64,000 nt of DNA, from IMG/VR virus record IMGVR_UViG_3300042482_000702, positions 258,478-322,477 of that record; one strand, given 5' to 3'. A program made the translations under genes and the position numbers. Position 1 is the stretch's first letter; each line of letters starts with the position of its first letter. Below, in pieces: positions 5,565 to 32,330 of the stretch. The notes beneath the pieces are model-generated. The model ran no database searches and was not told the origin of the DNA. It saw only the letters and a program-made list of their open reading frames with translations.

Positions 5565-5568
5565 ATAG

Positions 5569-5659
5569 TGGTATCAGATGGATTCGAACCACCGGCACAG
5601 GGTTTTTCAGAACCCTTGCTCTACCAAGGAAGATAAATCTCCCACTGAGCTATAATACC
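5569..5659 (-). tRNA. tRNA-Phe(GAA), atypical (D-loop hairpin insertion, 8-nt anticodon loop)
   Basis: GGTATTA/TGATACC acceptor; AGGGT-TCTGAAAA-ACCCT anticodon arm; GGTGG-TTCGAAT-CCATC T-arm. Confidence 0.7.
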
Positions 5660-13019: not shown

Positions 13020-13089
13020 ATTATTTAATTTTAAGGCAAAGATAATGTTTTTTTTTGTTAAAAAAAAGTATTTATATAAAAATAATAAT

Positions 13090-16000
13090 ATGAAAGGTCA
13101 AAAATTAGAAATTAGAAATAACGGTAATTCAAACACAACAATAAAATATCAAAATTTTAATGATTCTATATGGAGAAATGGTGTGATATTAAGAGCTAAC
13201 CAAATCATGAAAATATGGTGTGTTAAAGGAACTTTTTCTTCCGTATCAAAAAATGTTGTAATTTTATCATCCCTTGATTGGCCACTGGCTAAACCACCAG
13301 TAATTGGAACATCTAACTGTGTTTTACCAGATGGGTTAATCTCGATTAATGTTTTAACATCAATCGTACTTGAGAATCCAAGTGAAATTATAACATTTGA
13401 TTTAACATTTGACCCAATTAATGATTGGATGTATTTAAAATCAGACCCAAATTACATTAATAGAAATGAAATAAGAACGTACACCTCAATTTATAGTTAC
13501 AACCCTCAACGAATGGTTTTATATGATAGACGTACCGGATGTAAAGCAATTAATGGTTTTTATGTGTCTACTAACATTGTATACGTTACAAATGGTGTAA
13601 TGGAAATAACTGACGATACTGGTACGAGAAATCCAACACCAACACCAACGAAATCTTTACCACCAACACCAACACCAACAGAAACTCCAACACCAACACC
13701 AACGAAAACATTAACGCCTACGCCTACCCCAAGTTTAACCCCAAATTTCACACATAGTTTAAGATTAACATTTGACACTACTGAAAATATAAATTTATTA
13801 GTTGGCGACCCTACCAATGTTTTAAATTGGAATGTTTTTTTTGATTCATGGAATTATGGTAACTCATTTTCATCTGTAACTATTGACGATGTTAATGTTA
13901 TATTATTTGGAGGTGGTAATCTCACAATAAAAAATAATTTATTTGAAGGGAATAATTCTTTAATAGGGATTGTCGACGAATTTAATTGTGTAATTAGTTT
14001 AGGTGATTATGTTTTTTCTTCTTGTTTAAATTTAACAACAATAAATTTACCAAGTGTTACATATTGTGGCGAATATTGTTTTAATAACATCCCAAAAGTT
14101 GAGGTTATTAATTTACCGAATTTAATGGTGGCACTTTCAAATTCATTTAACGGAGAATCAGTTTTAACCGAATTATCTTTACCTAGTTTAATAAATGCTG
14201 GTTCATATTGTTTTAATTCTCGTAGTAATGTAACAAAATTTTATTTACCAAATTTAATATCAATAGAGAATTACGGATTTAATAATTGTACATCAATAAC
14301 TGATTTATACATCCCTTCTATATTGGCATTTGGGGAAACTTTTGATAGTTATGAAATTTTTGACGGTACAACGGGAAATACGATAAATTTAACTGTATCA
14401 TCATATGTTATGACGGGTAATACAGGTCTTCCGGATACCGATATTCAATATCTTATAGATAATAATAACATTACGTTAACAATTGTAGATGTACAGACAT
14501 CAAGTTTTACACAACCATCTCTTATGTTGGTTTTTGATGATATATCTAACGCAGAAACTTTAATGGGTTATTCCTTATCGGTCAGAGATTGGAACACATT
14601 CTTTGATTTACCAACTTATGGTTATCCATTTACTAGCGTAGAAGTAAGTGGTAATACAGTTAGTTTATTTGGTGGTTCTCAGATTATTATTAAAGATGAA
14701 TTATTCTTAAATAATATTCATTTAATTTCTGTAAGTGATACTTTAGGTTGTGTTATGTCAATCGGTAATTATAGTTTTCTAGGTTGTACATCCGCACTAA
14801 CCTTTAATTTCCCATCAGTAGTGAGCGTAGGAATATACGGAGGTTGTTTTGAACAGTGTGTGTCATTAACAACAATTAATTTACCGTTAGTCACAATTAT
14901 AAGTGATGATTGTTTTTACAATTGTACTAGTTTAATAAGTATTAATTTACCATGGGTTACAACTATAGGTATTTCTTCTTTTGCTTATTGTTCTTCATTA
15001 ACAACAATGAATTTACCTTTATGTACTAATTTAGGAGAAACTGTTGTGAATAATAATGTGTTTGCTAATATAACGGGACAAACTATAACATTAACAATAC
15101 CTTCTGAACTAATGACGTGTAATGAAGGACTTCCCGATGGAGATGTACAATATCTTATAGATAATAATGAGGTGACAGTCGTAGAAATATCGACTTCAGC
15201 TGAGATATACTTATCTCTAAATTTAACATTTGATAATATCACTAACGCCGATTTACTTGTTGGGGATGTATCATTAATAACAAACTGGAATACTTTCTTT
15301 GACCTTCCCACTTATGGAAATCAATTTATTAATGTAGAAGTAAGTGGTAATACGGTTAGTTTAATGGGTGGTTCTGAAATAACTATTAAACATAATTTAT
15401 TTTATAATAACATTAATATAATATCTATTTATGATACAGGTAGTGTTATAGCTTTAAACAATTCTAGTTTTGATTCTTGTACTAATTTAACAACAATAAA
15501 TTTACCTTCTTGTATTAATTTAGGTGGTTCAGTTTTAAATGATGATGTTTTTAATTTTATTGTAGGACAAACAATAACATTAACTATTCCAAATATATTA
15601 ATGACATGTAATGGGGGATTTCCTGATGGTGACATTCAGTATCTTATAGATAATAATGATGTGACAGTTATAGAAATAACAATCCCTATCCCAACACCAA
15701 CCCCAACACCAACCCCTATCCCAACACCAACACCATCAAATGATTTGACATACATGTTATTACCGGATAATGATTTATACTATGAATTGATTGAACCGAC
15801 ACCGACACCAACACCTACACCTACACCAACAGCAATTTTTGTGGATTGTGTGAATGAAGGTTTACTATATAATTGGCAAGCCGCGACATATAGTGGTACA
15901 GGTAATACCACAATTGCACCAGCTGGATGGCACTTACCAACAATTGAAGAATTTAACACTTTAAGAACATTCTTGTCAAACAGTTCTTATGATTTAATTG

Positions 16001-17949
16001 ATGGTACAAAATGGGTAGATTATCAGGACACACAAGATTGTACAAACTCATTAAAGTTTAATGTTTGGAATAATAGAGAAAGAACTATATCGGGAGAATT
16101 TCAAATGAGTTATTCTGTTTATTTTTGGGCATCACAAGATGATAATAATAAAAGAGCTTTTGAAGTTTATGGATGTTGTGGTGATATGTACACTGCAAGT
16201 GAATCAATCAACCACGGACATTCTATCAGACTTATTAAAGATAATTCTGATAACACAGGAACAATGACTGACTATGATGGTAATGTTTACTCAACAGTAA
16301 AGATAGGAGACCAAGTATGGTTAGCACAAAATTTAATGGTTACACATTACAATGATGGTACACCTATACCTTATGCGGAAGACAATACCACATGGGCGGC
16401 TAGTTCTGATGCTTTTTGCGCATACGAAGGAAATTGGGCTAATGTGGGGTGTGACGCACCAACACCTACTCCAACCCCTACACCAACAAATGAACAATTA
16501 CCAACACCAACAGTAACTACAACCTCAACACCTACACCAACTCCGACAAAGACACCAACCCCTACACCATTACCACCTACAGAATTTATATCTATATGGA
16601 GAACAACATCTCTTGATGAATCTATAACACTTCCTTATAACTTATCTGGAGCATACACAGGAACTATAGATTGGGGTGATGGTAATATATCTAGTAATTC
16701 TTATTCTAACAGAACTCATACTTACCTTACACCTGGTGATTACACAGTAACTGTATTTGGAACAATAAATGGATGGTCTTTTGGAGTTAGTAGTACTCTA
16801 AATAACGCTGTTAAAATACGAAGTATTAGTCAATGGGGAAGTTCATTTAGATTAGGTAATCAAACTCAGTGTTTTAGTAATTGCTCTAACTTAAACTTAA
16901 GTGGAGTTACAGACATACTGAATTTAGATGGAACTACTACTCTTTCTAATATTTTTAATGATTGCACATCATTAACCACAGTTGGTAGGATGAATGAGTG
17001 GGATGTTAGTCGGGTAACTAGTATGTTATTTATGTTTGTAAATTCCACATTCAATCAAAACATAGGAAATTGGAATGTTAGTAATGTTACTACTATGAAT
17101 GGTATGTTTTATAGGGCGACATCATTTAATCAAGATATTAGTTCTTGGAATGTTGGTAATGTAACTAATATGGATAATATGTTTAATATTGCACCCTCAT
17201 TTAATCAAGATTTAAGTAGTTGGTGCGTAACTCTTATTCCAACAACGCCCGCAGATTTTGACACACAAGCAACATCTTGGGTATTACCAAAACCAATATG
17301 GGGAACTTGTCCGGGACCAACACCAACACCAACAATAACTCAAACACCAACAAGAACACCATTACCACCGACAGAAGTTTTTATAGGTACACAAATCTTT
17401 ACTAATAGTAACCTTGATGTTACAACGTATAGAGATGGTACTGAAATACCACAAGTAACTGGTCAAACAGCTTGGGATAATTTAACCACTGGAGCTTGGT
17501 GCTATTACGCAAACAATACAGCTAATGGAGTTGTTTACGGAAAGTTATATAATTGGTATGCTGTTGCAGGAATAGATGGTAGTGGAATACCAAGAAATTT
17601 AGCACCTTTAGGTTATCATATTCCAACAGATGCAGAATGGACTACATTAACAACATATTTAGGAGGAGAAAGTGTAGCAGGAGGTAAAATGAAATCAACA
17701 GGAACATCGCTTTGGACAAACCCTAATACAGGAGCAACTAATGAGAGTGGTTTTACAGGTCTTCCTGGAGGGGGTCGCTACAGCAATGTGTCGTTCAACG
17801 CCATTGGCATCTTCGGTTTTTGGTGGAGTTCGTCAGAGGACATTTCTACTAGAGCCTGGTACCGCAACCTGAGTACCAACAATAACGATGTTAGCAGAAG
17901 CACCTACAATAAGAAAGACGGTTTCTCAGTAAGATTAATAAAAGACTAA
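13090..17949 (+). CDS. Large multidomain virion adhesin/fibre: 3 BspA-like LRR_5 modules, 2 Fib_succ_major (FISUMP) domains, DUF285 repeats, PT linkers
   Basis: Probable start MKGQKL at 13090 after TATTTAT (13069-13075); repeated FDLPTYG..LP..PDGDIQYLIDNN blocks; LYNW/GWHLP/WWSSS/SVRLIKD motifs; WDVSRVT/WNVSNVT repeats. Confidence 0.8.
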   Translation: MKGQKLEIRNNGNSNTTIKYQNFNDSIWRNGVILRANQIMKIWCVKGTFSSVSKNVVILSSLDWPLAKPPVIGTSNCVLPDGLISINVLTSIVLENPSEIITFDLTFDPINDWMYLKSDPNYINRNEIRTYTSIYSYNPQRMVLYDRRTGCKAINGFYVSTNIVYVTNGVMEITDDTGTRNPTPTPTKSLPPTPTPTETPTPTPTKTLTPTPTPSLTPNFTHSLRLTFDTTENINLLVGDPTNVLNWNVFFDSWNYGNSFSSVTIDDVNVILFGGGNLTIKNNLFEGNNSLIGIVDEFNCVISLGDYVFSSCLNLTTINLPSVTYCGEYCFNNIPKVEVINLPNLMVALSNSFNGESVLTELSLPSLINAGSYCFNSRSNVTKFYLPNLISIENYGFNNCTSITDLYIPSILAFGETFDSYEIFDGTTGNTINLTVSSYVMTGNTGLPDTDIQYLIDNNNITLTIVDVQTSSFTQPSLMLVFDDISNAETLMGYSLSVRDWNTFFDLPTYGYPFTSVEVSGNTVSLFGGSQIIIKDELFLNNIHLISVSDTLGCVMSIGNYSFLGCTSALTFNFPSVVSVGIYGGCFEQCVSLTTINLPLVTIISDDCFYNCTSLISINLPWVTTIGISSFAYCSSLTTMNLPLCTNLGETVVNNNVFANITGQTITLTIPSELMTCNEGLPDGDVQYLIDNNEVTVVEISTSAEIYLSLNLTFDNITNADLLVGDVSLITNWNTFFDLPTYGNQFINVEVSGNTVSLMGGSEITIKHNLFYNNINIISIYDTGSVIALNNSSFDSCTNLTTINLPSCINLGGSVLNDDVFNFIVGQTITLTIPNILMTCNGGFPDGDIQYLIDNNDVTVIEITIPIPTPTPTPTPIPTPTPSNDLTYMLLPDNDLYYELIEPTPTPTPTPTPTAIFVDCVNEGLLYNWQAATYSGTGNTTIAPAGWHLPTIEEFNTLRTFLSNSSYDLIDGTKWVDYQDTQDCTNSLKFNVWNNRERTISGEFQMSYSVYFWASQDDNNKRAFEVYGCCGDMYTASESINHGHSIRLIKDNSDNTGTMTDYDGNVYSTVKIGDQVWLAQNLMVTHYNDGTPIPYAEDNTTWAASSDAFCAYEGNWANVGCDAPTPTPTPTPTNEQLPTPTVTTTSTPTPTPTKTPTPTPLPPTEFISIWRTTSLDESITLPYNLSGAYTGTIDWGDGNISSNSYSNRTHTYLTPGDYTVTVFGTINGWSFGVSSTLNNAVKIRSISQWGSSFRLGNQTQCFSNCSNLNLSGVTDILNLDGTTTLSNIFNDCTSLTTVGRMNEWDVSRVTSMLFMFVNSTFNQNIGNWNVSNVTTMNGMFYRATSFNQDISSWNVGNVTNMDNMFNIAPSFNQDLSSWCVTLIPTTPADFDTQATSWVLPKPIWGTCPGPTPTPTITQTPTRTPLPPTEVFIGTQIFTNSNLDVTTYRDGTEIPQVTGQTAWDNLTTGAWCYYANNTANGVVYGKLYNWYAVAGIDGSGIPRNLAPLGYHIPTDAEWTTLTTYLGGESVAGGKMKSTGTSLWTNPNTGATNESGFTGLPGGGRYSNVSFNAIGIFGFWWSSSEDISTRAWYRNLSTNNNDVSRSTYNKKDGFSVRLIKD
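17773..17930 (+). other. Probable DGR variable region at the 3' end of the adhesin gene
   Basis: Abrupt enrichment of NNC codons and GC in a gene otherwise ending codons in A/T; consistent with adenine-mutated AAC/AAT template codons; C-terminal FISUMP (C-type lectin fold) domain. Confidence 0.7.
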
Positions 17950-18023
17950 TCAACACCGACACCGACACCTACACCAACATCAACATAAAATCAATAAAAT
18001 AACTATTTATAAATAAAAACATT

Positions 18024-20162
18024 ATGAAAGGACAAAGATTAATAATTAAAAATAACGGCACAACAAAAATTACATTAAAATATATAAATTTAAGTGATTT
18101 TTTGTTAAGAGACAACGTATCTTTAAATCCAAATCAAGTTAGGCACATATGGTGTGTTAAAGGAACTTTTAGTCACACATCAGGTGATTTATCAATTATT
18201 TCAGATATTGGTTGGCCACCTAAGAAAATAATTCAAAAACCAACACCTACACCAACGCCTACTAAAACATTTGTGCCAACTCAAACCCCAACTCAAACCC
18301 CAACAAATACCCCAACTAACACAGAAACACCAACTCAAACACCAACACCAACTCAAACACCTACACCAACAGATGTGTCGTTAATAACCCCTACCCCAAC
18401 ACAAACTCCAACACAAACAATGGAAGCAGGATATCACTATATTGCAAATTTATATGATTGTACATATGATTGTGCTCTTGCAGGTCCAAGTTTACCAGTT
18501 AAATCAACAACAACACCTTTAGAAATTGGTAAATTTTATAAAGACCCAGGTAGCCTTTCAGGTGGTACAGGATATTGTTGGGAAATTTTATCAGTAGGTA
18601 ATGAAATGACAATAGTCGATTTAGATTTAATGACACCATATGACACTTGTTCAGATTGTTGCGCCTTTTTATCTCCAACTCCAACAGCTACTCCTACGGA
18701 AACACCGACACCTACTCCAACAGCTACTCCTACGGAAACACCGACACCTACTCCTACTCCTACGGAAACTTCAGCACCTGCACCCAATGTTACATTTATA
18801 AATAATTCCACAATTGCATCTATAGATGATTTTATTGATAATTCAGGGTTTATATCATTAACTAACTTAACTGGTTCATTCCCTGTGACTTCAGGACAAA
18901 CACTTTCAGGGTATCACTCTATTATAACGGATGGACAACCTAGTACAACTATATCTGGTCAAGGAGTTATTAATTACTTAATAGAGATTAATGGTTTAGT
19001 GGTTTCTTCAGGTTCTACAGAAATCCCTGTTGGATTGGGTCTTGGTACGGGATTACCTTTAGATATTACCGATATTTTAGTGATAACAATAATTAACGAA
19101 CCTATACCCCTTACTATTTCATTAGAAGGATTTTACTTTTCAGGTTCGGTAGGTGCTGGATATCAAGCAATTGCTAACCAACCATTAATCGATGATGTAA
19201 CTATTAATTTTACTAATATATTAGGAACTATTACAGGACCACCGCTAGTAATTAGTGGTTCTGTTGAAATCTTATCAGGACAAACAAGTGGTTTTACTCA
19301 AACATTTATTGATTACGACTATAATAATTTAACAGAAGAAAGTTCATTCACTGGAATAACGTTTGAAGAGGTAGGGTTACCACAATATATTTTTTCAGGT
19401 GAAGTATCAGGTTCAACATTTAATGTAACACCTACACCAACACCAACGAATGAACAATTACCAACACCTACACCAACGGCGGAAGCAATAACAGGTGTTA
19501 CACCAACAGTAACCTCAACACCGACACCTACACCAACAATAAGTCCCGTAATGGCATCGTTATTTATTGATATAGTTGAGGGTTATAACGGTATTTCATT
19601 TGATGGGGTTACATATACATCAGACACAACAATCAATGTTATTAAAAATCAACAATATACTATTATTGCGTTTAATGGTAGTGGGTTGTTCCAAAATTGG
19701 GAGGGTACTAATGTTGATTTACCTGTACCTAATTCATCTAATACCATTGTAACTGTCACCGGTAATACCGCAACATTAAAAGCTGTGTTCCCTGAAGTAA
19801 CACCAACTCCAACTCCAACAGAAACACCAACACCTACTCCAACCCCAACAGTTGTCTCAAATGTGTTTAATGTAACTGCTGATGGTTCCTCTGCTTATAT
19901 AATAAACGGACAATCAAACCCTACATTAAGTATAACTGAAGGGGAAACTTATACATTTAACATATCAGCAATTGGACATCCGTTTTGGATTAAAACAGTA
20001 AATTCAACAGGCACAGAAAACTCATATAATGATGGAGTAACTAATAATGGAACTGATGACGGGACAATAACGTTTACAGTCCAATATGGTACACCATTTA
20101 TCCTTTATTATAATTGTCAATTCCATGCTAGTATGGCGGGTACTATAAATTTAACGCCTTAA
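18024..20162 (+). CDS. PT-linker multidomain virion protein with C-terminal cupredoxin-like domain
   Basis: N-terminus paralogous to 13090 (MKGQxLxIxNNG..IWCVKGTFS); C-terminal [18 protein letters not shown]. Confidence 0.75.
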
Positions 20163-24178: not shown

Positions 24179-24353
24179 AAATTTTAGCTAATAGCTAAAA
24201 CTATGTGGAGTTGGGTTGGTTGTTTTTCATATTAATTAGTTTAATTTTTTAAATAAAATGATGTTTAAATCTCCAAGTAAAAAAAAATACTGTTATTAGT
24301 AGTATTATCTTTATTACCTTAATAATCTTTTTTCCCATATTGATAATATTTTG

Positions 24354-24438
24354 TATCCGGAGAGGGACTTGAACCCTCAATCTCCTTTCGGAAAACTAGA
24401 TTTTAAGTCTAGCGTGTATACCATTTCACCACCCAGAT
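24354..24438 (-). tRNA. tRNA-Leu(TAA)
   Basis: Cloverleaf with long variable arm; CTAGA-CTTAAAA-TCTAG. Confidence 0.92.
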
Positions 24439-24658
24439 GTGTTCCCCCAATGAGATTAGTTTGGGGTAGAATTTTTTCGGTTTTTCTATTCAAAAGTCGA
24501 GACGGTCTTACCCGCACATAAAAGTCAACTATTACTTGGAGGTGAGTTAGTATGCTCCCTTTTTTCCAAAGACCTCATCTATCAAACCGTTTGAGGCGTC
24601 AGCTACATCTTTGTTTAAGAAACGATGCCAAATCTCTTGAGTATCTCTATCTCAATTG

Positions 24659-24739
24659 AGCTTCCGGTTGGATTCGAACCAACGTGCCATTCGGTCCTAC
24701 TTACAAAATAGGTGCAATCAACCACTATGCGACGGAAGC
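24659..24739 (-). tRNA. tRNA-Thr(TGT) with extended variable region
   Basis: CCTAT-TTTGTAA-GTAGG; 12-nt variable region ACCGAATGGCAC. Confidence 0.85.
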
Positions 24740-24949
24740 CTGTTGCAGAGTATTTTTTTTAAGTAGAAGTCAACTCTGTCTCTTAAACTACTAAAAGAAA
24801 CTGTCCAAGGTCTATCCTGCTTTCGCTGTCCAGATTTTTCTCTGTTTCTTAAAACATCATCACTTCGGCCACATTGGGAGAACCGCAGTTCCCACGTTGT
24901 TTAAGGAGGTAGTTGGCGGTGTATCACACCGAGTTATGATAATGTATTG

Positions 24950-25023
24950 TACCCCCAGTGAGAGTCGAACTCACAAAACTCTTCATCCTAAGTGAAGCGA
25001 CTTTCCCGTTTGTCCACAGGGGT
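24950..25023 (-). tRNA. tRNA-Leu(TAG) with short variable loop
   Basis: CTTCA-CTTAGGA-TGAAG; variable region only AGTTTT. Confidence 0.85.
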
Positions 25024-25085
25024 AAATTGATGGGACTTTAACCCATCTGTTGACTATAACAAAAACATAAAGAAAGAAAAATTAG

Positions 25086-25207
25086 TAGTGTAGATAGGAA
25101 TCGAACCTACCTCGATGAATTACTTGTAATATGCACCAACTCTTCTCTCCAATCCTAGTATTAAGGAGTGTTACCTACAAATTACCATCACTCAACCCTT
25201 TTACACC
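25086..25207 (-). ncRNA. tRNA-like RNA with expanded, non-tRNA core
   Basis: GGTGTA/TACACT acceptor and GTAGG-TTCGATT-CCTAT T-arm enclose ~90 nt with no recognisable D or anticodon arm. Confidence 0.5.
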
Positions 25208-25212
25208 ATTTG

Positions 25213-25284
25213 TGACTCCACAGGGATTCGAACCCCGATAATTTCCTTAGAAGAGAAATGTCCTATCCGTTGAACGATGGAGCC
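25213..25284 (-). tRNA. tRNA-Arg(TCT)
   Basis: Cloverleaf; TTTCT-CTTCTAA-GGAAA. Confidence 0.9.
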
Positions 25285-25289
25285 AATTT

Positions 25290-25507
25290 ATTCTGTTACC
25301 GACATAGATTGGTAATTAAGTGTGAAAGCCCAAACCCTTTCACTCCCGTATTATCATCCTGCCACATTCTTGACGAATGCCGACGTTTTCACTTAACCTT
25401 CCGTTAGACATGCGAATCTATGTTTTCTGTATGTGGTGAGTAACTTCCTTCCCCACTTGTGTTTCCGAGATATCGAGGGCACCATACTGTCTAACGTCAA
25501 ACAGAAT
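25290..25507 (-). ncRNA. Candidate multibranched ncRNA (~215 nt)
   Basis: Closing helix ATTCTGTT/AACAGAAT; internal helices GTTAGACA/TGTCTAAC, ACATAGATT/AATCTATGT, TTAAGTG/CACTTAA, GTGAAAG/CTTTCAC. Confidence 0.55.
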
Positions 25508-25717
25508 ATAATTTTTAAAATAGTTTGACCAAATTTTTCACCATTGCGGTCTTAAGGAGCTATGACTTCATCTCCATGTCCGTTATGGGTAATTACTCCC
25601 AGATGGATGACCGGTGCGCCGTTGTCTTTCATCATACTTTTCACCAACCTATGTGTTAAAGGGTTCCGGCAGTGTCCCCGAAGGTTACTTCATATAATTA
25701 CTTTTTCACTATTTTTG

Positions 25718-25789
25718 AGCGAATGGAGGGAATCGAACCCTCATCCCTTGATTGGAAGTCAAGAGTAATGACCATTATACGACATTCGC
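25718..25789 (-). tRNA. tRNA-Gly(TCC)
   Basis: Cloverleaf; CTTGA-CTTCCAA-TCAAG; U73. Confidence 0.92.
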
Positions 25790-25922
25790 AGTTTAGATGA
25801 ACTTCGGACTTGTGTACCGAAATGAGACCCAATAATTAAATCACTAACCCCGGGTGTGGTCTATTCATCTATTTTTTTAAGCTTATACCTTTAAAATAAA
25901 TTTTAATTTTAAGCTTATAAGC

Positions 25923-26096
25923 TTAAACTTTCGTTTTAAGGTTGTTAATCTCCTTCTCGATTCTTTTCTTATCAGAATCAGTTAAAGGAATCTTGGTATT
26001 CATAGTACCCTTTTCGGTTTTTACACCATTTTTTAATTGTTTCTCCAACACTTCAAGAACTCTTTGTTGTCTTGACCTTTTCGCTGCTGTTGCCAT
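25923..26096 (-). CDS. Small basic protein (not in ORF track)
   Basis: MATAAKRSRQQRVLEVLEKQLKNGVKTEKGTMNTKIPLTDSDKKRIEKEINNLKTKV*, 57 aa. Confidence 0.7.
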   Translation of the reverse strand: MATAAKRSRQQRVLEVLEKQLKNGVKTEKGTMNTKIPLTDSDKKRIEKEINNLKTKV

Positions 26097-26118
26097 ACGG
26101 ATTTAGTTATTAAATTAG

Positions 26119-26191
26119 TAGCGTAGGGCAGGTAACGCTCCTGCTTTGGTCGGCTTATGAGACCGATGAGATACTATACCTCCCCCTCGCG
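26119..26191 (-). tRNA. tRNA-fMet-like (CAT)
   Basis: C1:U72 mismatch; TCGGT-CTCATAA-GCCGA; bulged acceptor; T-loop AGCGTTA. Confidence 0.7.
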
Positions 26192-26206
26192 ATGTATTAT
26201 TTTTTG

Positions 26207-26278
26207 CGGTCTATGAGAGAATCGAACTCTCATCTCTACCGTGACAGGGTAGCATCCTAGCCGTTGAACGAATAGACC
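26207..26278 (-). tRNA. tRNA-Asp(GTC)
   Basis: Cloverleaf; CTACC-CTGTCAC-GGTAG; G73. Confidence 0.92.
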
Positions 26279-26419
26279 AAAATTTTCAATCCAAAGGTGA
26301 CAAACCTATAACAATTGAAAGAGAAAGAACCGTGTTTCCCGGGTAGTGACTTCCCGTATTCTGTCTTCCTGTTTTGTTTTACAAAGATAGTTATTAAATC
26401 TTTAATAACCAATTTTTTT

Positions 26420-27025
26420 TTACACCATTTTATTAAGTGTTGGTAAATACCATTTAAATCTCACCGCCATTACTCTAACTGATATAATCACTAATGAAGT
26501 GGTTAAATATAACACATCTGAGTTTAGGTTAAATTTCCTAAGTATGAAGAACACAATCCCCCCTAATATACAAATGGTAGCATATATTTCTTTTTTAAAG
26601 ATAACCGGTATTTCAGCACATAGAATATCTCTAATCACACCACCAAAACAAGCGGTCATTGTACCTAATGCGATACATATAATGGGATGTAGACCAATGT
26701 TTATTCCTTTTTCTAACCCAATCAATGTGAATACCCCTAAACCGATTGTATCAAATATAAAAAGATATATTTTAAATTTCTCTATTAGTTGTTTGAATAA
26801 TAATGTTACTATAAACCCTGTTATTATTACATAGATATAATCTATGTTGAGCATCCATCCCACCGGTGTTCTTCCAATCATTACATCTCTCAGTGTTCCT
26901 CCACCTAATGCGGTTACGAATGTAATTATAAACACACCAAATAAATCCATTTTTTTATCTATGGATACTAAAGCTCCGGATATGGCAAATGCCAGTGTTC
27001 CTATTAGGTCTAATAAATTAAACAT
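26420..27025 (-). CDS. TRIC/UPF0126 (YadS-like) membrane protein
   Basis: Twin repeats AFAISGA..GGGTLRDV and TACFGGVIRDIL..EIP; about 7 TM helices. Confidence 0.88.
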   Translation of the reverse strand: MFNLLDLIGTLAFAISGALVSIDKKMDLFGVFIITFVTALGGGTLRDVMIGRTPVGWMLNIDYIYVIITGFIVTLLFKQLIEKFKIYLFIFDTIGLGVFTLIGLEKGINIGLHPIICIALGTMTACFGGVIRDILCAEIPVIFKKEIYATICILGGIVFFILRKFNLNSDVLYLTTSLVIISVRVMAVRFKWYLPTLNKMV

Positions 27026-27072
27026 TAATCATTTATTTTAAATTAATTGGTCTTAACAATAGACCTTTTTTG

Positions 27073-27144
27073 TGGAGCTACACGGTAACGCTCCGTGTTC
27101 TATGATTTGCAAAACCATTGTAATTGCTTTTATACGACAGCCCC
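27073..27144 (-). tRNA. tRNA-Ala(TGC)
   Basis: G3.U70; ATGGT-TTTGCAA-ATCAT; T-loop AGCGTTA. Confidence 0.88.
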
Positions 27145-27205
27145 AATTTTGGATAGATGAGGTTCTATCCGGACCAGTACCTTCTCCCTTGGGAGATGTC
27201 AGTTG

Positions 27206-27277
27206 TAGCCCCACCGGGAGTCGAACCCGACTTTTATGGATGAAAACCATATGTCCTAACCGATAGACGATAGGGCC
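27206..27277 (-). tRNA. tRNA-Glu(TTC)
   Basis: Cloverleaf; TATGG-TTTTCAT-CCATA. Confidence 0.9.
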
Positions 27278-27285
27278 GTTTTGTA

Positions 27286-27332
27286 TTACCAATATGTCAA
27301 TTAACTTGTTTGTTTTTGATGGTACAAAGATA
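27286..27332 (-). promoter_or_regulatory. tRNA-operon promoter plus boxA-like leader
   Basis: TATCTTTG (27325-27332) followed by TTGACATATTGGTAA (27286-27300), identical to 35462-35476. Confidence 0.65.
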
Positions 27333-27356
27333 ATGCTTTATTTCATTCCACCAAAC

Positions 27357-27494
27357 TTATTCTTCAATAATATTATTCAGAACCAAATCTAATGCGTGGT
27401 CTTCATCCCACTCTGATTCATCAACAACATTTTTTAATCCGTAGGTTACTCCCAATATCGGTGAGTAATCCATAACCAATTCTTCTCTAATCAT
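27357..27494 (-). CDS. Small acidic protein (not in ORF track)
   Basis: MIREELVMDYSPILGVTYGLKNVVDESEWDEDHALDLVLNNIIEE*. Confidence 0.5.
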   Translation of the reverse strand: MIREELVMDYSPILGVTYGLKNVVDESEWDEDHALDLVLNNIIEE

Positions 27495-27631
27495 ACCTGT
27501 TATTATTTTTTAGTTATTTTATCCACATATTTTTTACCTACGGCTACTAATAAAATAAAACATATCAATAATCCACTAATAATAACCACCAATTGTTCTC
27601 CTGTATATTCTTCCATATCTTTAATTTGTTT

Positions 27632-27862
27632 TTACCAAGTATTGGTGTTATAAATACAAAACTCTGAACCCACTTGGGCGTTTCTCCAATCATTCGGATA
27701 TAGATAAAATAATTTATCATCACCGGTACATTCATTTCTAATTACAACAGAATAATCTCGTACTCTATTACTAACCACTAAACCACAATTACAACTCACA
27801 TACTCATTAATAGAACAAGATAAGAATAGTGGGATAACTATAATTAAAATTAATTTTTTCAT
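27632..27862 (-). CDS. Small lipoprotein
   Basis: Probable start MKKLILIIVIPLFLSC; lipobox; promoter TATCTTTG at 27880-27887. Confidence 0.7.
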   Translation of the reverse strand: MKKLILIIVIPLFLSCSINEYVSCNCGLVVSNRVRDYSVVIRNECTGDDKLFYLYPNDWRNAQVGSEFCIYNTNTW

Positions 27863-27980
27863 AACCCTTTTATTTTTGACAAAGATACAACTTAATTTCA
27901 TTCTACCAAATATAAATCAAAAAAAAAATCCACCTTTTTTTGAAGATGGATTTTTAAATATTTTTTTACTTAAATATATA

Positions 27981-28055
27981 TCATACCATCGTCTTCCAAG
28001 TTGTATCTCTACCCTCAGTTCCCGCTATCGTAAGTAATATGTTTAAAGTTTGCAT
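27981..28055 (-). CDS. Leader-peptide-like mini ORF followed by a terminator
   Basis: MQTLNILLTIAGTEGRDTTWKTMV*; TATTTAT at 28079-28085; hairpin AATCCATCTTC-AAAA-AAGGTGGATT plus T-run downstream. Confidence 0.45.
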   Translation of the reverse strand: MQTLNILLTIAGTEGRDTTWKTMV

Positions 28056-28185
28056 TTTTTGTGTTATTGTAATTTCTAATAAATATACGACATTTTGTGA
28101 AAGTGTCAAGTGGTTTTAAAATTATTTTTTAAACTTAATCATAATTTAAGATATTTATAGTAAATAAACTTTTAAAAATTCAATT

Positions 28186-28356
28186 ATGAATAAAGAACAA
28201 ATTTTTGGTGTTATTCGCCACGTATTCACTGCCATTGGTGGTATTGTCATTGCACAAGGTTACATATCTGATAGTATGTACACTGAATTATCCGGAGCGA
28301 TATTAACATTAACTGGTGTAATTTGGTCAATTGTTGCTAAAAAATCTACAGTATAA
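28186..28356 (+). CDS. Small two-TM putative holin (not in ORF track)
   Basis: MNKEQIFGVIRHVFTAIGGIVIAQGYISDSMYTELSGAILTLTGVIWSIVAKKSTV*; TATTTAT at 28152-28158; terminator at ~28365-28392. Confidence 0.7.
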   Translation: MNKEQIFGVIRHVFTAIGGIVIAQGYISDSMYTELSGAILTLTGVIWSIVAKKSTV

Positions 28357-28420
28357 TAAACAGAAAAAGGTTAGAGAAATCTAACCTTTTTTTATGCCTT
28401 TAAGTTAAATAAAAAAAAGC

Positions 28421-28622
28421 TTAACAACCCCGCCCTCGGGTCGTAGCGGGCAACTTGAGAATTACTTCTCGTGGGAATTCCGGAATTGGTTGTGTTCCTC
28501 ACCGGCGTACCAGTCCTTATCTATCCTTTAACCGTATTTCTACGGTGCTACTGTTGGGAGGTCACCCCTATCAACACACCTAGTCCATTAGTTTTTTAGA
28601 GTATGGACACCCCGGTTGTTAA
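28421..28622 (-). ncRNA. Candidate multibranched ncRNA A (~200 nt)
   Basis: Closing helix TTAACAACC/GGTTGTTAA; hairpins GTCCAT/ATGGAC, ACCGTA-GAAA-TACGGT, GAGAA-GTAA-TTCTC (GNRA loops fix the minus strand). Confidence 0.65.
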
Positions 28623-28690
28623 ACTTTTTAATTTAATATTCTCTTACATAACGGCGATTATCGCCGGTATTAACCTAATTGGTAAATAAA

Positions 28691-28840
28691 AAAACAGACA
28701 ATGGGGATTCTCCGATATTTCAGTCTTAGGGGACTAGACGGGCATCATACCCGTGTTTACCCTCGGCGGTCTCTTGGTTTGGTTGATTACTCCAAACCTC
28801 ACCCCTACACTACCACTGACGTAAGTTATAGGTCTGTTTT
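28691..28840 (-). ncRNA. Candidate multibranched ncRNA B (~150 nt)
   Basis: Closing helix AAAACAGAC/GTCTGTTTT; AGGGG/CCCCT, GGTTTGG/CCAAACC and ACGGG/CCCGT helices. Confidence 0.6.
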
Positions 28841-28857
28841 TAATTCTTTGTAAAACA

Positions 28858-29086
28858 ACAGACGGCTTTGAAGTACATCCACACCAACAATTATGACCGA
28901 CTTCACCTTATGTGGAAGTTTAGTTTTACAATATCTATCAAGATTTACCCCAGTCTTTAGGTCGCTATTAATACCTTTAACCCATACTCTCGGAACACTA
29001 TGGAGATGGAATCAAACCATCTAATAACCCGTCGGTTATAGCGTCAGCCTTATATTTCCTATCTTTTGGAGATAACTTTCGTCTGT
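28858..29086 (-). ncRNA. Candidate multibranched ncRNA C (~230 nt)
   Basis: Closing helix ACAGACG/CGTCTGT; ATAACC-GACG-GGTTAT, AGATGG-TTTGATT-CCATCT (T-arm-like), ACTTC/GAAGT. Confidence 0.55.
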
Positions 29087-29120
29087 CACCTTATTCAACC
29101 TTATATGAATAAATCTTTTG

Positions 29121-29227
29121 CCCTTCCAGTGGGAATCGAACCCACATACTCTTAATACATTCTTGGAATGGTTACCGGAGGGAGATGTATTCGTCTCTGT
29201 GTTTTGCTCTTTTTAAACTACAGAAGG
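29121..29227 (-). ncRNA. tRNA-like RNA with replaced anticodon arm
   Basis: CCTTCTG/TGGAAGG acceptor, GTTT/GAGC D-stem and GTGGG-TTCGATT-CCCAC T-arm; anticodon region replaced by ~60 nt containing an AATACAT/ATGTATT stem. Confidence 0.55.
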
Positions 29228-29233
29228 ATTTTG

Positions 29234-29304
29234 CACGTTTGATAGGTCTCGAACCCATACAAATTCTTTTGGAGAGAATTATGCTACCATTACATCACAA
29301 ACGT
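29234..29304 (-). tRNA. tRNA-Trp(CCA)
   Basis: Cloverleaf; ATTCT-CTCCAAA-AGAAT; G73. Confidence 0.9.
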
Positions 29305-29305
29305 A

Positions 29306-29953
29306 TTATTTTAACCATTTTCTAACAGCGTTATCACTAACACCATATTTACGACCTGTTCCTCTATACCCAAGATTAATAATATCTTGTTTTATTTGTT
29401 CTATGGACGGTCTTTCAACTTTTCTATTTTGTTTATTTGAACATTTAATACATTTATCACTTTTTTTATCTTTTGTACTACCACATTCACAATGATATTT
29501 AATTTTATTGGATTTCCCGGAATATGTACTAGTTTGGGAGTGACAATTAGGACATAAAAATCTTAAATTTTCTATTCTATTATCATTATTAACTCCATTT
29601 ATATGGTCTAAATGTAGACTAATATTTTTACCATTCCACACCCCATTATTACCACATTCAATACATTTATATTCAAGTAAATTTTTCTTTAATATTCTAT
29701 TTTTAATTTTTTGTCTTGGAAATGTTGAATTTTCAACAAAAACATCCTCATCTAATCTAACCTCTTTAGGTCCAGTCCCATAATAATTATATTTAGGAAT
29801 CTCTAATCCCAATTTAATTATTCTATCTTTAATGTTCCTATAACCACCCGAACCATTTGGTGATAAATTAAATAATAAAATAACCTCTCTCATAGATTTT
29901 GAATTATTCAAAATTTCAAATAACTCTTCTTTTGTAATAGTTTTTAAGTTCAT
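29306..29953 (-). mobile_element. Free-standing HNH homing endonuclease gene
   Basis: CIECG..LHLDHINGVNNDNRIENLRFLCPNCHSQT; C-terminal Zn finger and HTH (GRKYGVSDNAVRKW); stop codon 1 nt from the tRNA-Trp 5' end. Confidence 0.85.
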
Positions 29954-30184
29954 ATTATGTCTTTTATTATAAATATCTTAAAAAATACCAAAGTTCACCA
30001 TAACCTATGTTTTACCAAAAATAATAACATAATCATTCGTAGTCCCCTGCCGGGCAACCCTCCTACTTTTTCACACAATCCGGATGCCTCCAAATCTAAT
30101 TTTCTTTTTTACCCCTATTAAGAAACGCGTTTTCCGTTCGGTAGTTCAAGCCCATTTTCGTGAGTTAAATAATTATGTTATTTG

Positions 30185-30267
30185 AGTTCAGGGTCGGATT
30201 CGAACCGACGAGGACTTTCGTCATTGGTTTTGCAGACCAATCTAATCAACCACTCTAGCACCTGAAC
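30185..30267 (-). tRNA. tRNA-Cys(GCA) with long variable arm
   Basis: TTGGT-CTGCAAA-ACCAA; U73; variable arm GAC-GAAA-GTC. Confidence 0.88.
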
Positions 30268-30328
30268 ATTTAAAGTAAAATATAATTTACAAATACACCC
30301 ATTTTTGTAAATTATATTTAATGTTAAT

Positions 30329-30574
30329 TTAATAACCTATTTCATCTTTAACCTCCCATTGTTTATCAATGGGGATTCTTTCAATCTTTTCCACCGGAAC
30401 AAATCCGTCAAATCCTTTGTCTTTAACATCTTCAAAATGTTCTATGGTGTCCAAGTAAAATCCAAATTGATATCTAACGTATTGGAACTTCTCTCCGTCC
30501 CAATAAGCGACGTGGTTGTTTCTACAGAAACCATTATACCACCCCTCAACCATTTCATTTTTTGGTATCATCAT
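30329..30574 (-). CDS. Hypothetical protein
   Basis: Probable start MMIPKNEMVEGW at 30574 (AT-rich leader); the upstream part of the longer ORF call is GC-richer and looks structured. Confidence 0.65.
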   Translation of the reverse strand: MMIPKNEMVEGWYNGFCRNNHVAYWDGEKFQYVRYQFGFYLDTIEHFEDVKDKGFDGFVPVEKIERIPIDKQWEVKDEIGY

Positions 30575-30698
30575 TTCTATTTTTATATTAGCACCCTTGT
30601 CTATATAGCCTGAATCTCTCAAGCGCCATGCCTTATTAGGGTCTCTATATAAACTTAGGGTCACGTAGTTACTGGATGAACCCAAATAACTTACTTGC

Positions 30699-30773
30699 TG
30701 AGAACTCATTTGTGTTGATAGAGGCGTTCTCTATACGTTTAATTTACCTATTCCTTTCTCAAGGGAACAACAC
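30699..30773 (-). ncRNA. Pseudoknot RNA motif, copy 1 of 3
   Basis: GTGTTG-TTCC-CTTGAGAAA-GGAA..ATAGAG/CTCTAT..CAACAC-AAATGAG-TTCTCA. Confidence 0.6.
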
Positions 30774-30888
30774 ATCTACCATTTCTGATAGTATCTTTAT
30801 GTAAATAACCAAGACAATTGTACAAATGCTACCACGTATTTCTTTGGTTCACTTATTATTTACAAAGGTTTCAATGTTTAACCTATTT

Positions 30889-31074
30889 TTACAACGATAC
30901 AATTACATTTCTACTTTTGAGAATCTTTCTCAAAAAAACTAATCTTTTTCTATGATTAACATACTCATCAGCATCATTGGCTTTATGACCTCTAAATATT
31001 GATTCGGTTATCTCACAATCCAATTTAATAATTTCGGTTATTATCTCCTCCGTGGTTAAATTACTTTTTTTCAT
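30889..31074 (-). CDS. Hypothetical protein
   Basis: 61-aa ORF overlapping the upstream stop (ATGA). Confidence 0.6.
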   Translation of the reverse strand: MKKSNLTTEEIITEIIKLDCEITESIFRGHKANDADEYVNHRKRLVFLRKILKSRNVIVSL

Positions 31075-31397
31075 ATCTTCTCAAATTCGTCTTCAAATCC
31101 GTACCACTCATCACCATTTTCATCTTCGTACCAACATTTGTATTCTCGCTCGTACCGATTCCAATCAATTCTTGTTAATTCAACTTCATTTCCCCCATCT
31201 TTGTTTATAACCACTTCACCCACTTGGAATGTTTGTGGTGCGTAATTGTCGATTGTTTTACTTTGAATAATTAAATCTCCAACACTTTTAACCTCATCGG
31301 TTTGGATATTGGTGTAATTTCCTCCGGATGATAATTTCCACCCTTTACTATACAACCAAATCGTAAAATCTAAAATTTCTTTTTCTAATAACATAAT
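31071..31397 (-). CDS. Hypothetical protein
   Basis: Probable start MLLEKEIL; promoter TATCTTTG at 31416-31423. Confidence 0.65.
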   Translation of the reverse strand: MMLLEKEILDFTIWLYSKGWKLSSGGNYTNIQTDEVKSVGDLIIQSKTIDNYAPQTFQVGEVVINKDGGNEVELTRIDWNRYEREYKCWYEDENGDEWYGFEDEFEKI

Positions 31398-31426
31398 ACA
31401 TCTGTTTTGTGAGTACAAAGATAATA

Positions 31427-31759
31427 CTATTTTTTACCCAATCCTACAATCGTAACACTTTTAATCTTTTTTTTACCTTTTTTAACTTTTTTCTCAACTT
31501 TTGGTTGGGAAACTCTACTTTGTTTCGCCAATACCTTCCTTGTTCTTTTACACATTTTTTCTAAAATCTCCAATGATTCAAGATTCTTAAAGAAAACAGT
31601 TAGAAGTTCTTCCGATTCGTCTGAAGAATAAATATTATCACCAATCATTCTTGGTTTTAATAATTTATTAAAACTAATAAATGGTGTTTGAGTAATATTC
31701 TCAATTCCCGCACCCATAGACAATTCTCCCAATCCCGCAACAACAATACTTTTTTTCAT
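31427..31759 (-). CDS. Hypothetical protein with Lys-rich tail
   Basis: 110 aa; promoter TATCTTTG at 31783-31790. Confidence 0.65.
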   Translation of the reverse strand: MKKSIVVAGLGELSMGAGIENITQTPFISFNKLLKPRMIGDNIYSSDESEELLTVFFKNLESLEILEKMCKRTRKVLAKQSRVSQPKVEKKVKKGKKKIKSVTIVGLGKK

Positions 31760-31820
31760 AATTTTTATATATTTAATTTCGACAAAGATAATACAATTTT
31801 TTAAACTACCAAACTTTATT

Positions 31821-32330
31821 TTAAAAAAATAAATAAGGTTCCCATTCTTTTGGGATATCGTGATGAACTTGTTTCATTAACATCAGATAATGTGGTCGTC
31901 TTGGTTGAGGTATGTCTTTACCATATTCCTCTAACGTCAAATTGGACTTCTCACCGTTACATCTCCTACAAGCGGTAACCAAGTTGTCCCAACTATCTTT
32001 ACCCCCCTTAGATTGGGGTACTACATGGTCTAATGTTAATGTCTTTCTGTTATTACACCCACAATATACACATTCAAAGTTATCTCTACGATAAACATTC
32101 TCTCTATTTAAAGGAACTTTTTGTATGATTTGATTAACATACTTATATACCCGAATGATTGATGGTTTTTTGATGTCCAATTCAGGATTTACTAATTTGA
32201 ATGATTCCGGATGTTCGTTTATAACATCGGCATTACCTTTATAAGAAATGACGAAAGCCCTCTCTGTGGAAATAATACTCCTCGCCATGAAACTTGAATC
32301 TAAAACCAAAGTTTTTTGGTAACTACTCAC
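31821..32330 (-). CDS. HNH endonuclease (McrA-like)
   Basis: RDNFECVYCG..TLDHVVPQSKGGKDSWDNLVTACRRCNGEK. Confidence 0.88.
   Translation of the reverse strand: MSSYQKTLVLDSSFMARSIISTERAFVISYKGNADVINEHPESFKLVNPELDIKKPSIIRVYKYVNQIIQKVPLNRENVYRRDNFECVYCGCNNRKTLTLDHVVPQSKGGKDSWDNLVTACRRCNGEKSNLTLEEYGKDIPQPRRPHYLMLMKQVHHDIPKEWEPYLFF

What the first reader, a model, noticed from the sequence alone, without database searches (positions are those of the whole stretch)
17773..17930. Probable DGR variable region in the terminal FISUMP domain of a giant adhesin, with no TR or RT in the window
Seen: the last ~53 codons (RYSNVSFNAIGIFGFWWSSSEDISTRAWYRNLSTNNNDVSRSTYNKKDGFSV) switch to NNC codons (TAC AGC TTC AAC GCC GGC ATC TTC GAC TAC CGC AAC ACC AGC) while the rest of the gene, including the first FISUMP domain, ends codons in A/T. 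Known: DGR retrohoming mutates template adenines, so AAC/AAT template codons give NNC/NNT codons at the C-terminus of C-type-lectin-fold targets. Inference: the template would read roughly RNNN..FNNIGNNGNWWSSSENN..NAWNRNLNNNNNNVNRNNNNKKNGFS and lie elsewhere in the genome with a reverse transcriptase, or the domain was recently captured from a DGR-bearing donor.
Basis: partly seen in the sequence, partly recalled or inferred. Interest (0 to 1): 0.72.

Follow-up and report, generated by a model that had tools for sequence, protein, structure and literature searches.

The report
Orphan DGR variable region in phage fibre
The end of a giant fibre gene in a 322-kb freshwater T4-like phage carries the sequence signature of a diversity-generating retroelement (DGR) variable region of the type found in Flavobacterium, but the phage has no reverse transcriptase or template and every sampled copy of the region is identical.

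Summary
The last ~50 codons of the 1634-aa gene (window 13045-17949) have GC3 0.64 against 0.19 for the whole gene, the most extreme stretch in any real gene of the genome.

The DGR reading is strongly supported. The stretch aligns without gaps to true template repeats (TRs) found next to Avd and reverse transcriptase (RT) genes in Flavobacterium/Bacteroidota genomes. Related phage copies differ from gene A at 43-62% of TR-adenine sites but only 10-18% of non-adenine sites. Third codon positions are more conserved than first and second. The domain models as the C-type-lectin fold of DGR variable proteins.

The window is the last 64 kb of a 322,477-bp T4-like phage record. That record has no RT, no Avd and no TR. 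No cognate TR was found in IMG/VR, JGI contigs or GTDB representative genomes. Every recovered copy of this phage's region, from at least four other assemblies, is identical.

Best reading: an orphan, currently static DGR-type variable region on the receptor-binding tip of a phage fibre. One oddity remains: three other phages without an RT, one with a complete genome, carry regions copied from one shared unsampled template.

The parts
13045..17949 (+). Giant modular fibre/adhesin gene A (1634 aa). It has an N-terminal ~70-aa module shared with the next gene, PT linkers, three BspA-type LRR_5 blocks, an internal FISUMP domain followed by a fragment of a second one, a PKD-like stretch, a DUF285/PARCEL repeat block and a terminal FISUMP domain.
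   Evidence: ORF list and translation; Pfam and NCBIfam scans; N-terminal module shared with 18024-20162 at 50% identity.
17377..17943 (+). Terminal FISUMP (Fib_succ_major) domain with a C-type-lectin fold; probable ligand- or receptor-binding tip.
   Evidence: PF09603 matches aa 1445-1633. The AF2 model has pLDDT 93.1. The best VIA-align match is the DGR variable protein TvpA 2y3c at Z 8.4, then Lcl C-terminal domain 8q4e at Z 7.7, Mtd 1yu0 at Z 6.9 and TaqVP 5vf4 at Z 5.7. The whole domain is 64-73% identical in DNA to Flavobacteriia DGR target domains.
17773..17919 (+). DGR-type variable region (49 codons). NNC/NNT codons are interleaved with an invariant scaffold (CGC, TTC, ATT GGC, TGG TGG AGT TCG TCA GAG, GCC TGG, CGC, AGA, AAG).
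   Evidence: GC3 is 0.64. It aligns without gaps to TR175/TR194/TR195. Against TR195 it mismatches 28/67 adenine sites and 17/98 non-adenine sites, p = 7e-4. Against other phage VRs it differs at 43-62% of TR-A sites and 10-18% of non-A sites.
17920..17949 (+). Conserved phage-type tail GGT TTC TCA GTA AGA TTA ATA AAA GAC TAA (GFSVRLIKD*). It occupies the position of the IMH in bacterial VR/TR pairs but is AT-rich.
   Evidence: The tail is shared by phage relatives and by paralogues B and C. Bacterial VR/TR pairs end GTG CGT TGC CTC AGG GAT instead. No hairpin follows it: MFE -1.8 kcal/mol, z -0.8.
17950..17988 (+). In-frame PT-linker remnant directly after the stop codon ([12 protein letters not shown]). 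It is a scar suggesting the FISUMP cassette, with its stop, was inserted into a PT linker.
   Evidence: Read directly from the sequence.
15832..16242 (+). Internal FISUMP domain of the same gene, used as an internal control. It shows no codon shift.
   Evidence: Its VR-equivalent codons 1009-1059 have GC3 0.16.
18024..20162 (+). Neighbouring PT-linker fibre gene that shares the N-terminal module of gene A.
   Evidence: Translation and tblastn at 50% identity over 68 aa.

Best explanation
Window 17773-17919 is a DGR variable region. It was written by adenine-directed mutagenic retrohoming from an AAC/AAT-rich template repeat of the Bacteroidota 'CLec2' (DUF1566/FISUMP) DGR family. The AAC/AAT template codons become NNC/NNT codons, which explains the local C-ending codon usage in a 31.5% GC genome.

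The region forms the ligand-binding face of the C-type-lectin-fold domain at the distal end of a giant modular fibre of a freshwater T4-like jumbo phage. The likely host is Flavobacterium or a related Flavobacteriia member.

In this phage the region is an orphan. The genome has no reverse transcriptase, Avd or template repeat, and the region lacks the GC-rich IMH and the downstream hairpin seen in bacterial VRs. Every sampled copy is identical, so it is now a fixed allele that evolves by ordinary mutation.

Shown: the codon shift; homology to real TR/VR pairs; the adenine-site variation pattern; the fold; the absence of DGR machinery; identical copies across samples. Inferred: that the domain, or its VR, entered the phage lineage from a DGR-bearing source (a Flavobacteriia host or a DGR-carrying phage), and that it acts in host binding.
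For: - Codon shift: GC3 is 0.64 against 0.19 for the gene, the top value among real genes genome-wide. The internal FISUMP domains show no shift.
- Real TRs: a scan of GTDB genomes for the 18-nt scaffold gave 30 loci, nearly all freshwater Flavobacteriia. Three of them are true TRs beside Avd and RT genes. Their cognate VRs have 0 non-adenine mismatches and 45-52% adenine-site mismatches.
- Gene A's VR aligns in register with these TRs. It mismatches 42% of adenine sites and 17% of non-adenine sites, p = 7e-4.
- Columns that vary among five phage VRs coincide with TR adenines: OR 14.9, p = 7e-14. Pairwise differences lie at TR-A sites rather than non-A sites, p 1e-5 to 1e-15.
- Codon-position identity is inverted. 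Upstream it is about .88/.86/.66 for positions 1/2/3; in the VR it is .65/.65/.86.
- The fold is that of DGR variable proteins and C-type lectins. FISUMP/DUF1566 is a recognised DGR target class (PMC5758913).
- No DGR machinery in the phage genome: PF00078 none; no RT-like YxDD context in six frames; tblastn with the Flavobacterium RT and Avd gives best E 0.06; the best non-self 'match-or-A' score is 72%.
- Static allele: Logan contigs from two other lake samples cover the VR with 0 differences. Two further JGI contigs encode identical protein. No variant at 78-99% identity was listed among the best hits of >5,600 homologues.
Against: - Only assembled contigs could be examined, not raw reads. 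Low-frequency adenine-site variants would be invisible.
- In runs X8 and X11 no identical contig spans the VR, although the flanks are present. This could reflect heterogeneity or simply low depth.
- The record is linear without terminal repeats, and the window sits at its end, so a missing piece cannot be strictly excluded despite CheckV 100%.
- No donor with a cognate TR was found, so the capture step is inferred rather than shown.
- VRs of three other RT-less phages share one template more closely than their genes share synonymous sites. This hints that some DGR still reaches phages of this kind.
Confidence: 0.72

Rival explanations
1. The region is still diversified, but in trans. A DGR (Avd, TR, RT) encoded outside the phage genome, in the Flavobacteriia host, a resident prophage or mobile element, or a co-infecting phage, supplies mutagenised cDNA that homes into the phage gene during infection.
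For: - VRs of L162, L166 and L008 differ at 46-57% of TR-A sites but only 1-3% of non-A sites, while their upstream synonymous sites are only about 73-77% identical.
- L008 lies in a DTR-complete 30.5-kb phage with no RT, Avd or TR.
- None of ten VR-bearing viral records has a credible RT.
- Avd/TR/RT are known to work in trans from a plasmid (PMC5758913).
- L014 and L015 differ in 5.2 kb only at three putative A-sites of the VR.
Against: - No cognate TR exists in any GTDB representative genome that carries the scaffold; the three TRs found differ at 8-24% of non-A sites from the phage VRs compared. IMG/VR has none either.
- The phage tail differs from the bacterial IMH-like end at about half of its 18 positions, and no hairpin follows it.
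- Gene A's VR is identical in every sample examined, and it sits 10-12% from the shared phage scaffold at non-A sites.
Confidence: 0.15
2. The phage has its own DGR, but the RT and TR lie in a part of the genome missing from the record.
For: The record is 'linear' with no terminal repeats, and the window ends at the record's end.
Against: CheckV completeness is 100%. A DTR-complete relative-bearing phage also lacks RT and TR. All sampled copies of the VR are identical.
Confidence: 0.04
3. The region is not DGR-derived. The C-ending codons reflect a patch acquired from a GC-richer genome, or selection on codon usage or an overlapping nucleic-acid element.
For: GC rises locally to 0.46-0.48. The phage and bacterial domains are interleaved in the tree, so exchange does occur.
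Against: The shift is codon-position specific. First and second positions are hypervariable and third positions are conserved across relatives. Variable columns track TR adenines. The flanking two-thirds of the same domain has normal AT-rich codons. No structure or terminator is predicted.
Confidence: 0.03

Closest known systems
DGR target class 'd' / CLec2 variable regions (DUF1566, DUF823, Fib_succ_major), exemplified by Legionella LdtA (Wu et al. 2018, PMC5758913)
   Same: The VR lies in the last ~50 codons of a C-type-lectin-fold FISUMP/DUF1566-like domain. It has NNC/NNT codons on an invariant scaffold ending in GFS-V-R. It is homologous in DNA to the TRs and VRs of Flavobacterium/Bacteroidota cassettes ordered target-Avd-TR-RT.
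   Different: No RT, Avd or TR is present in the genome. The tail is AT-rich instead of a GC-rich IMH, and no downstream hairpin follows. The nearest TR mismatches 17% of non-adenine sites. The carrier is a lytic-type T4-like jumbo phage rather than a bacterial chromosome.
Bordetella phage BPP-1 Mtd and its DGR
   Same: A phage receptor-binding protein whose C-terminal C-type-lectin-fold domain carries a DGR variable region. The model matches Mtd 1yu0 at Z 6.9.
   Different: BPP-1 encodes avd, TR and brt immediately beside mtd. Here the phage encodes none of them, and the VR shows no variation between samples.
Treponema denticola TvpA and remote DGR targets
   Same: This is the best structural match (2y3c, Z 8.4). 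Treponema shows that one TR can serve several distant VRs.
   Different: Remote targets there lie in the same genome as the RT and TR, and they match the TR at all non-adenine sites. Neither holds for gene A.

Membership tests
FISUMP / Fib_succ_major domain (PF09603, TIGR02145) | Profile match above the curated cut-off | tested here: met
   PF09603 scores 196 bits against a cut-off of 33.9; TIGR02145 scores 157.7 bits against 41.65.
DGR variable protein (C-type-lectin-fold target) | VR at the C-terminus of a C-type-lectin-fold domain | tested here: met
   The AF2 model has pLDDT 93. VIA-align gives TvpA Z 8.4, Lcl C-terminal domain Z 7.7, Mtd Z 6.9, TaqVP Z 5.7 and many C-type lectins. Z values near 8 are only moderate by the tool's own note.
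DGR variable region | Variation confined to positions that are adenine in the template | tested here: met
   Gene A against six other phage VRs differs at 43-62% of TR-A sites and 10-18% of non-A sites, p 2e-5 to 4e-8. Variable columns against TR adenines give OR 14.9, p = 7e-14. Third codon positions are more conserved than first and second.
DGR (complete, functional element) | Cognate TR that differs from the VR only at TR adenines | tested here: not met
   In the own genome the best 'match-or-A' score is 72%. Degenerate and consensus scans of IMG/VR and JGI contigs gave 0 hits. The three TRs found in GTDB genomes mismatch 17-21% of non-A sites.
DGR (complete, functional element) | DGR-type reverse transcriptase in the same genome | tested here: not met
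   PF00078 gave no hit at E <= 1. No RT-like YxDD context appears in six frames. tblastn with the Flavobacterium and Bacteroides DGR RTs gave best E 0.06.
DGR (complete, functional element) | Accessory Avd-type gene | tested here: not met
   tblastn with two Avd proteins from L195 and L175 gave best E 5.
DGR (complete, functional element) | IMH at the 3' end of the VR and a downstream hairpin or cruciform | tested here: not met
   The phage tail is GTAAGATTAATAAAAGAC against the bacterial GTGCGTTGCCTCAGGGAT. The 100 nt after the VR fold at -1.8 kcal/mol, z -0.8. The bacterial VR is followed by a GC hairpin.
DGR (complete, functional element) | Hypervariability of the VR within or between populations | tested here: inconclusive
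   Identical VR is seen in contigs from X2 and X6 and in two JGI contigs. Contigs hide minor variants, and X8 and X11 lack an identical VR contig.

The most novel reading that the evidence does not exclude
Freshwater Flavobacteriia phages that encode no reverse transcriptase, including this jumbo phage's lineage and a complete 30.5-kb phage, have the receptor-binding tips of their fibres rewritten by a DGR located elsewhere. That source could be the host, a mobile element or a co-infecting phage. Phage host-range diversification would then be outsourced to a trans-acting retroelement that shares one template across unrelated phage genomes.
Probability: 0.15. Interest if true: 0.85.

Novelty: new variant of a known kind. 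Interest (0 to 1): 0.6.

Why it matters
DGR surveys start from the reverse transcriptase, so variable regions in genomes without one go uncounted. This case shows that a codon-usage anomaly alone can reveal a DGR-written binding site in a phage that has no DGR.

It also links the adhesin tips of freshwater phage fibres, at the DNA level, to the DGR-diversified surface proteins of their likely Flavobacterium hosts.

The side result raises a testable question. Three phage contigs with no detectable reverse transcriptase, one of them a complete genome, carry regions derived from one template. Either DGR-diversified modules are traded between genomes as finished products, or phage tropism can be diversified in trans.

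Tried and rejected
- A fully degenerate {base or A} pattern for the TR matched only poly-A/T runs in IMG/VR, which wasted one scan. It was repeated with third codon positions fixed: 0 hits in IMG/VR and JGI contigs.
- Inferred-TR consensus patterns and a phage-type-tail TR pattern gave 0 hits in IMG/VR and JGI contigs. The metagenome collection also failed to return TRs that do exist in MAGs, so its silence is weak evidence.
- The three terminal FISUMP domains of this genome (A, B, C) cannot be VRs of one TR, because they differ by indels.
- The FISUMP remnant at genome ~78.9 kb was considered as a TR. It is only a ~20-codon decayed 3' fragment.
- A weak RVT_1 hit (14.8 bits) in the record of L164 lies in a 1494-aa structural-looking ORF and is not RT-like.
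- The phage-type tail pattern was searched in five candidate host genomes and in 401 Flavobacterium genomes. The only hit was one non-DGR FISUMP C-terminus.
- The three-base L014/L015 difference was considered as evidence of activity. It is too small, and a full retrohoming event should change many sites.
- Foldseek against PDB gave only weak hits; VIA-align was needed.
Full report
**1. Where the window lies**

The window is the last 64 kb (258,478-322,477) of a 322,477-bp IMG/VR virus record with 31.5% GC. The record is classed linear, with CheckV completeness 100%. It encodes a T4-type major capsid protein (Gp23, E 1e-64) and no NCLDV capsid. The window holds 21 tRNA genes, an Hsp70 homologue and a T4-type RNA ligase. 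This is a jumbo T4-like phage. The stretch occurs in at least 20 lake or freshwater metagenomes dated 2018-2025.

**2. The observation**

The flagged stretch is the end of a 1634-aa ORF, window 13045-17949. The ORF has this architecture:
- an N-terminal module
- PT linkers
- three BspA-type LRR blocks
- an internal FISUMP domain
- a DUF285/PARCEL block
- a terminal FISUMP domain at aa 1445-1633

GC3 is 0.187 for the whole gene. The maximum 50-codon window is 0.64 and falls exactly on the flagged codons. Genome-wide this is the second-highest value among 242 long frames, and the first is a spurious repeat frame. The equivalent parts of the internal FISUMP domains of this gene and of paralogue B have GC3 0.16 and 0.23. 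Two other genes of the genome, B (179660-184627, minus strand) and C (67169-70066, minus strand), also end in FISUMP domains. Their C-termini show weaker shifts (GC3 0.33 and 0.44). They differ from A by indels, so the three are not copies of one template.

**3. No DGR machinery in the phage**

- PF00078 gave nothing at E <= 1.
- A six-frame search for YxDD motifs found no RT-like context.
- tblastn with the RT and Avd proteins of two genuine Bacteroidota DGRs gave best E 0.06.
- A scan that counts each genome position as compatible if it equals the VR base or is adenine gave at most 72% for any non-self site. A real TR should approach 100%.

**4. The DGR signature across relatives**

A protein-seeded scan of IMG/VR found 34 loci encoding this domain. 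Many show the same C-terminal GC3 jump, for example 0.17 to 0.62, 0.23 to 0.66 and 0.41 to 0.95. Others show none.

The codon alignment of gene A with L007-L010 and L014 is diagnostic. In the first two-thirds of the domain, third positions vary and codons end in A or T. In the last ~50 codons, about 25 columns read NNC or NNT. Their first two positions are nearly random and their third position is conserved. These columns are interleaved with invariant codons, including rare ones (TCG, GAG, CGC, GCC).

Quantitatively, codon-position identities invert. For A against L008 they are 0.88/0.86/0.66 upstream and 0.65/0.65/0.86 in the VR. Ordinary divergence cannot give this pattern. A templated, position-specific process is required.

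**5. The real templates**

A scan of one genome per GTDB species for the invariant 18-mer plus NNCNNT returned 30 loci. Nearly all come from freshwater Flavobacterium, Flavobacteriaceae or other Bacteroidota, including Flavobacterium sp. CYK-55 and strain BAL38. Most are VRs at protein C-termini ending in GFSVRCLRD*.

Three are true TRs, with 23-25 AAC/AAT codons out of 70. In L195 and L175 the layout is a canonical cassette: target gene ending in the VR, a ~126-aa Avd-like gene, the TR, then a 408-423-aa RT with a YVDD motif. L194 has the same order but a disrupted RT frame and no core-bearing VR. The cognate pairs VR175/TR175 and VR195/TR195 have 0 mismatches at non-adenine sites and 45-52% at adenine sites.

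The TRs translate as ...R NNN GTF NN IG NN G N WWSSSE .. N AW N R N L N Y NN ... N R NNNN K(K) N GFS.

**6. Gene A against the templates**

Gene A's VR aligns with these TRs in register and without gaps over 165 nt. Against TR195 it mismatches 28/67 adenine sites and 17/98 non-adenine sites (p = 7e-4). This is the behaviour of a non-cognate member of the same VR/TR family, and bacterial VRs against foreign TRs behave alike.

Among five phage VRs, the variable columns coincide with TR adenines (OR 14.9, p = 7e-14). Pairwise, gene A differs from six other phage VRs at 43-62% of sites that are adenine in all three TRs. At sites that are non-adenine in all three, it differs at 10-18%. Against the phage scaffold, its deviations at originally non-A positions are G>A, C>A, C>T and G>A. 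This fits a little AT-biased decay since the last templated event.

**7. Fold**

An AlphaFold2 model of aa 1440-1634 has pLDDT 93. Foldseek gave only weak hits, led by the Legionella Lcl C-terminal domain. The Foldseek-independent search put the DGR variable protein TvpA first (Z 8.4). It was followed by FGE-like proteins, Lcl (Z 7.7, 23% identity), Mtd (Z 6.9), TaqVP (Z 5.7) and dozens of C-type lectins. FISUMP/DUF1566 is a recognised DGR target class, 'CLec2' (PMC5758913).

**8. Is it active?**

- Logan contigs from two other samples and studies cover the VR with zero differences: X2 over 17734-17937 and X6 over 17426-17937.
- In a 5.8-billion-cluster protein collection the domain has more than 5,600 homologues. 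The only close ones are 100%-identical copies from two further JGI contigs. The next best listed is 77% identical, so no listed hit has the same framework with a different VR.
- The phage tail (GTA AGA TTA ATA AAA GAC) differs at about half of its 18 positions from the GC-rich end shared by bacterial VR and TR. No hairpin follows it, whereas the bacterial VR is followed by a GC hairpin.
- No cognate TR was found in IMG/VR, JGI contigs or GTDB representative genomes.

Caveats: contigs hide minor variants. In runs X8 and X11 no identical contig spans the VR. The JGI contig scan also missed TRs known from MAGs, so its silence is weak evidence.

**9. Origin**

The whole terminal domain is 64-73% identical in DNA to Flavobacteriia target domains. 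In a tree of the non-VR part, phage and bacterial sequences interleave, though the alignment is short and support values were not assessed. An in-frame PT-linker remnant follows gene A's stop codon (17950-17988). A ~20-codon FISUMP 3' remnant follows another ORF at genome ~78.9 kb. These scars fit cassette-like movement of the domain. Capture from a DGR-bearing source is therefore the best reading, but no donor was identified and the transfer is not recent relative to any sampled sequence.

**10. An unexplained side result**

The VRs of L162 (same contig as L009), L166 and L008 differ from each other at 46-57% of TR-adenine sites but at only 1-3% of non-adenine sites. Third-position identity in the upstream part of the domain, computed for the L008-L009 pair, is only 0.77. 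They therefore derive from one template more recently than the genes diverged. L008 sits in a 30,567-bp phage genome with 127-bp direct terminal repeats that has no RT, Avd or TR. None of ten VR-bearing viral records has a credible RT. Either finished VR modules are exchanged between genomes, or a DGR outside these phages writes into them. Gene A lies 10-12% from that shared scaffold and looks like an older, fixed product.

**11. Verdict**

- The 'DGR variable region' reading is strongly supported.
- 'TR and RT elsewhere in the genome' is refuted for this record.
- Active diversification is not supported.

The best explanation is an orphan, static DGR-type variable region on a phage fibre tip (confidence about 0.72). 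Trans-diversification is the most interesting reading that remains open (about 0.15).

Noticed in passing
L008 (record G002, 30,567 bp, 127-bp DTR), L162 (same contig as L009), L166-L168 and L170: The VRs of three different phage contigs with no detectable RT differ at 46-57% of TR-adenine sites but only 1-3% of non-adenine sites, so they come from one unsampled template. One of them is a complete genome with no RT, Avd or TR.
   Followed up: partly
window 17950-17988: Directly after gene A's stop codon the frame continues as [12 protein letters not shown]. This is a PT-linker remnant and suggests the FISUMP cassette, with its stop, was inserted into a linker.
   Followed up: no
genome 78,920-78,990 (minus strand; outside the window): A ~20-codon remnant of a FISUMP C-terminus (NRKDNGFSVRLIKD*) lies just after the stop of an ORF that ends in an SprB-like repeat. 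It is a scar of C-terminal domain replacement.
   Followed up: partly
window 24353-35452, plus 5568-5659: 21 tRNA genes lie on the minus strand, most in a ~11-kb array interspersed with small ORFs.
   Followed up: no
window 52532-54406 (minus strand): A full-length Hsp70/DnaK homologue (PF00012, E 5.5e-253) is encoded by the phage.
   Followed up: no
window 18024-20162 (+): The next gene shares the ~70-aa N-terminal module of gene A (50% identity). It carries many PT linkers and ends in a stretch with a cupredoxin-like C-x2-H-x2-M motif ([11 protein letters not shown]). It also has a weak match to the anammox S-layer glycoprotein family.
   Followed up: no
window 15856-16431: The internal FISUMP region of gene A is one domain (profile positions 50-187) followed by only the first 42 profile positions of another, and then a PT linker. 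This is a domain-shuffling scar.
   Followed up: no
genome 67,169-70,066 (gene C, minus strand; outside the window): Gene C carries about five tandem copies of a ~14-aa unit (CEYRIDVQDMSSAA / CEYRIDVQE..PIYS) immediately before its terminal FISUMP domain.
   Followed up: no
L014 against L015/L016 (IMG/VR contigs from different samples): Within 5.2 kb of otherwise identical sequence, the only differences are three bases in two adjacent NNC codons of the VR (AAC TAC against AGC GTC). All three fall at putative template-adenine positions.
   Followed up: partly
L201 and L189 (Flavobacterium / Flavobacteriaceae MAG contigs): Two bacterial-bin contigs carry VRs that end with the phage-type peptide (SVRLIKD / SVRLIRD) rather than SVRCLRD. 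They may be prophage or mis-binned phage DNA.
   Followed up: no
runs X8 and X11, window ~17760-17932: The phage's flanks are present at depth ~7-9, but no identical contig covers the VR. X11 has a contig over 17678-18124 with 10 substitutions and 12 gap letters. The cause could be low depth, a relative, or VR heterogeneity.
   Followed up: no
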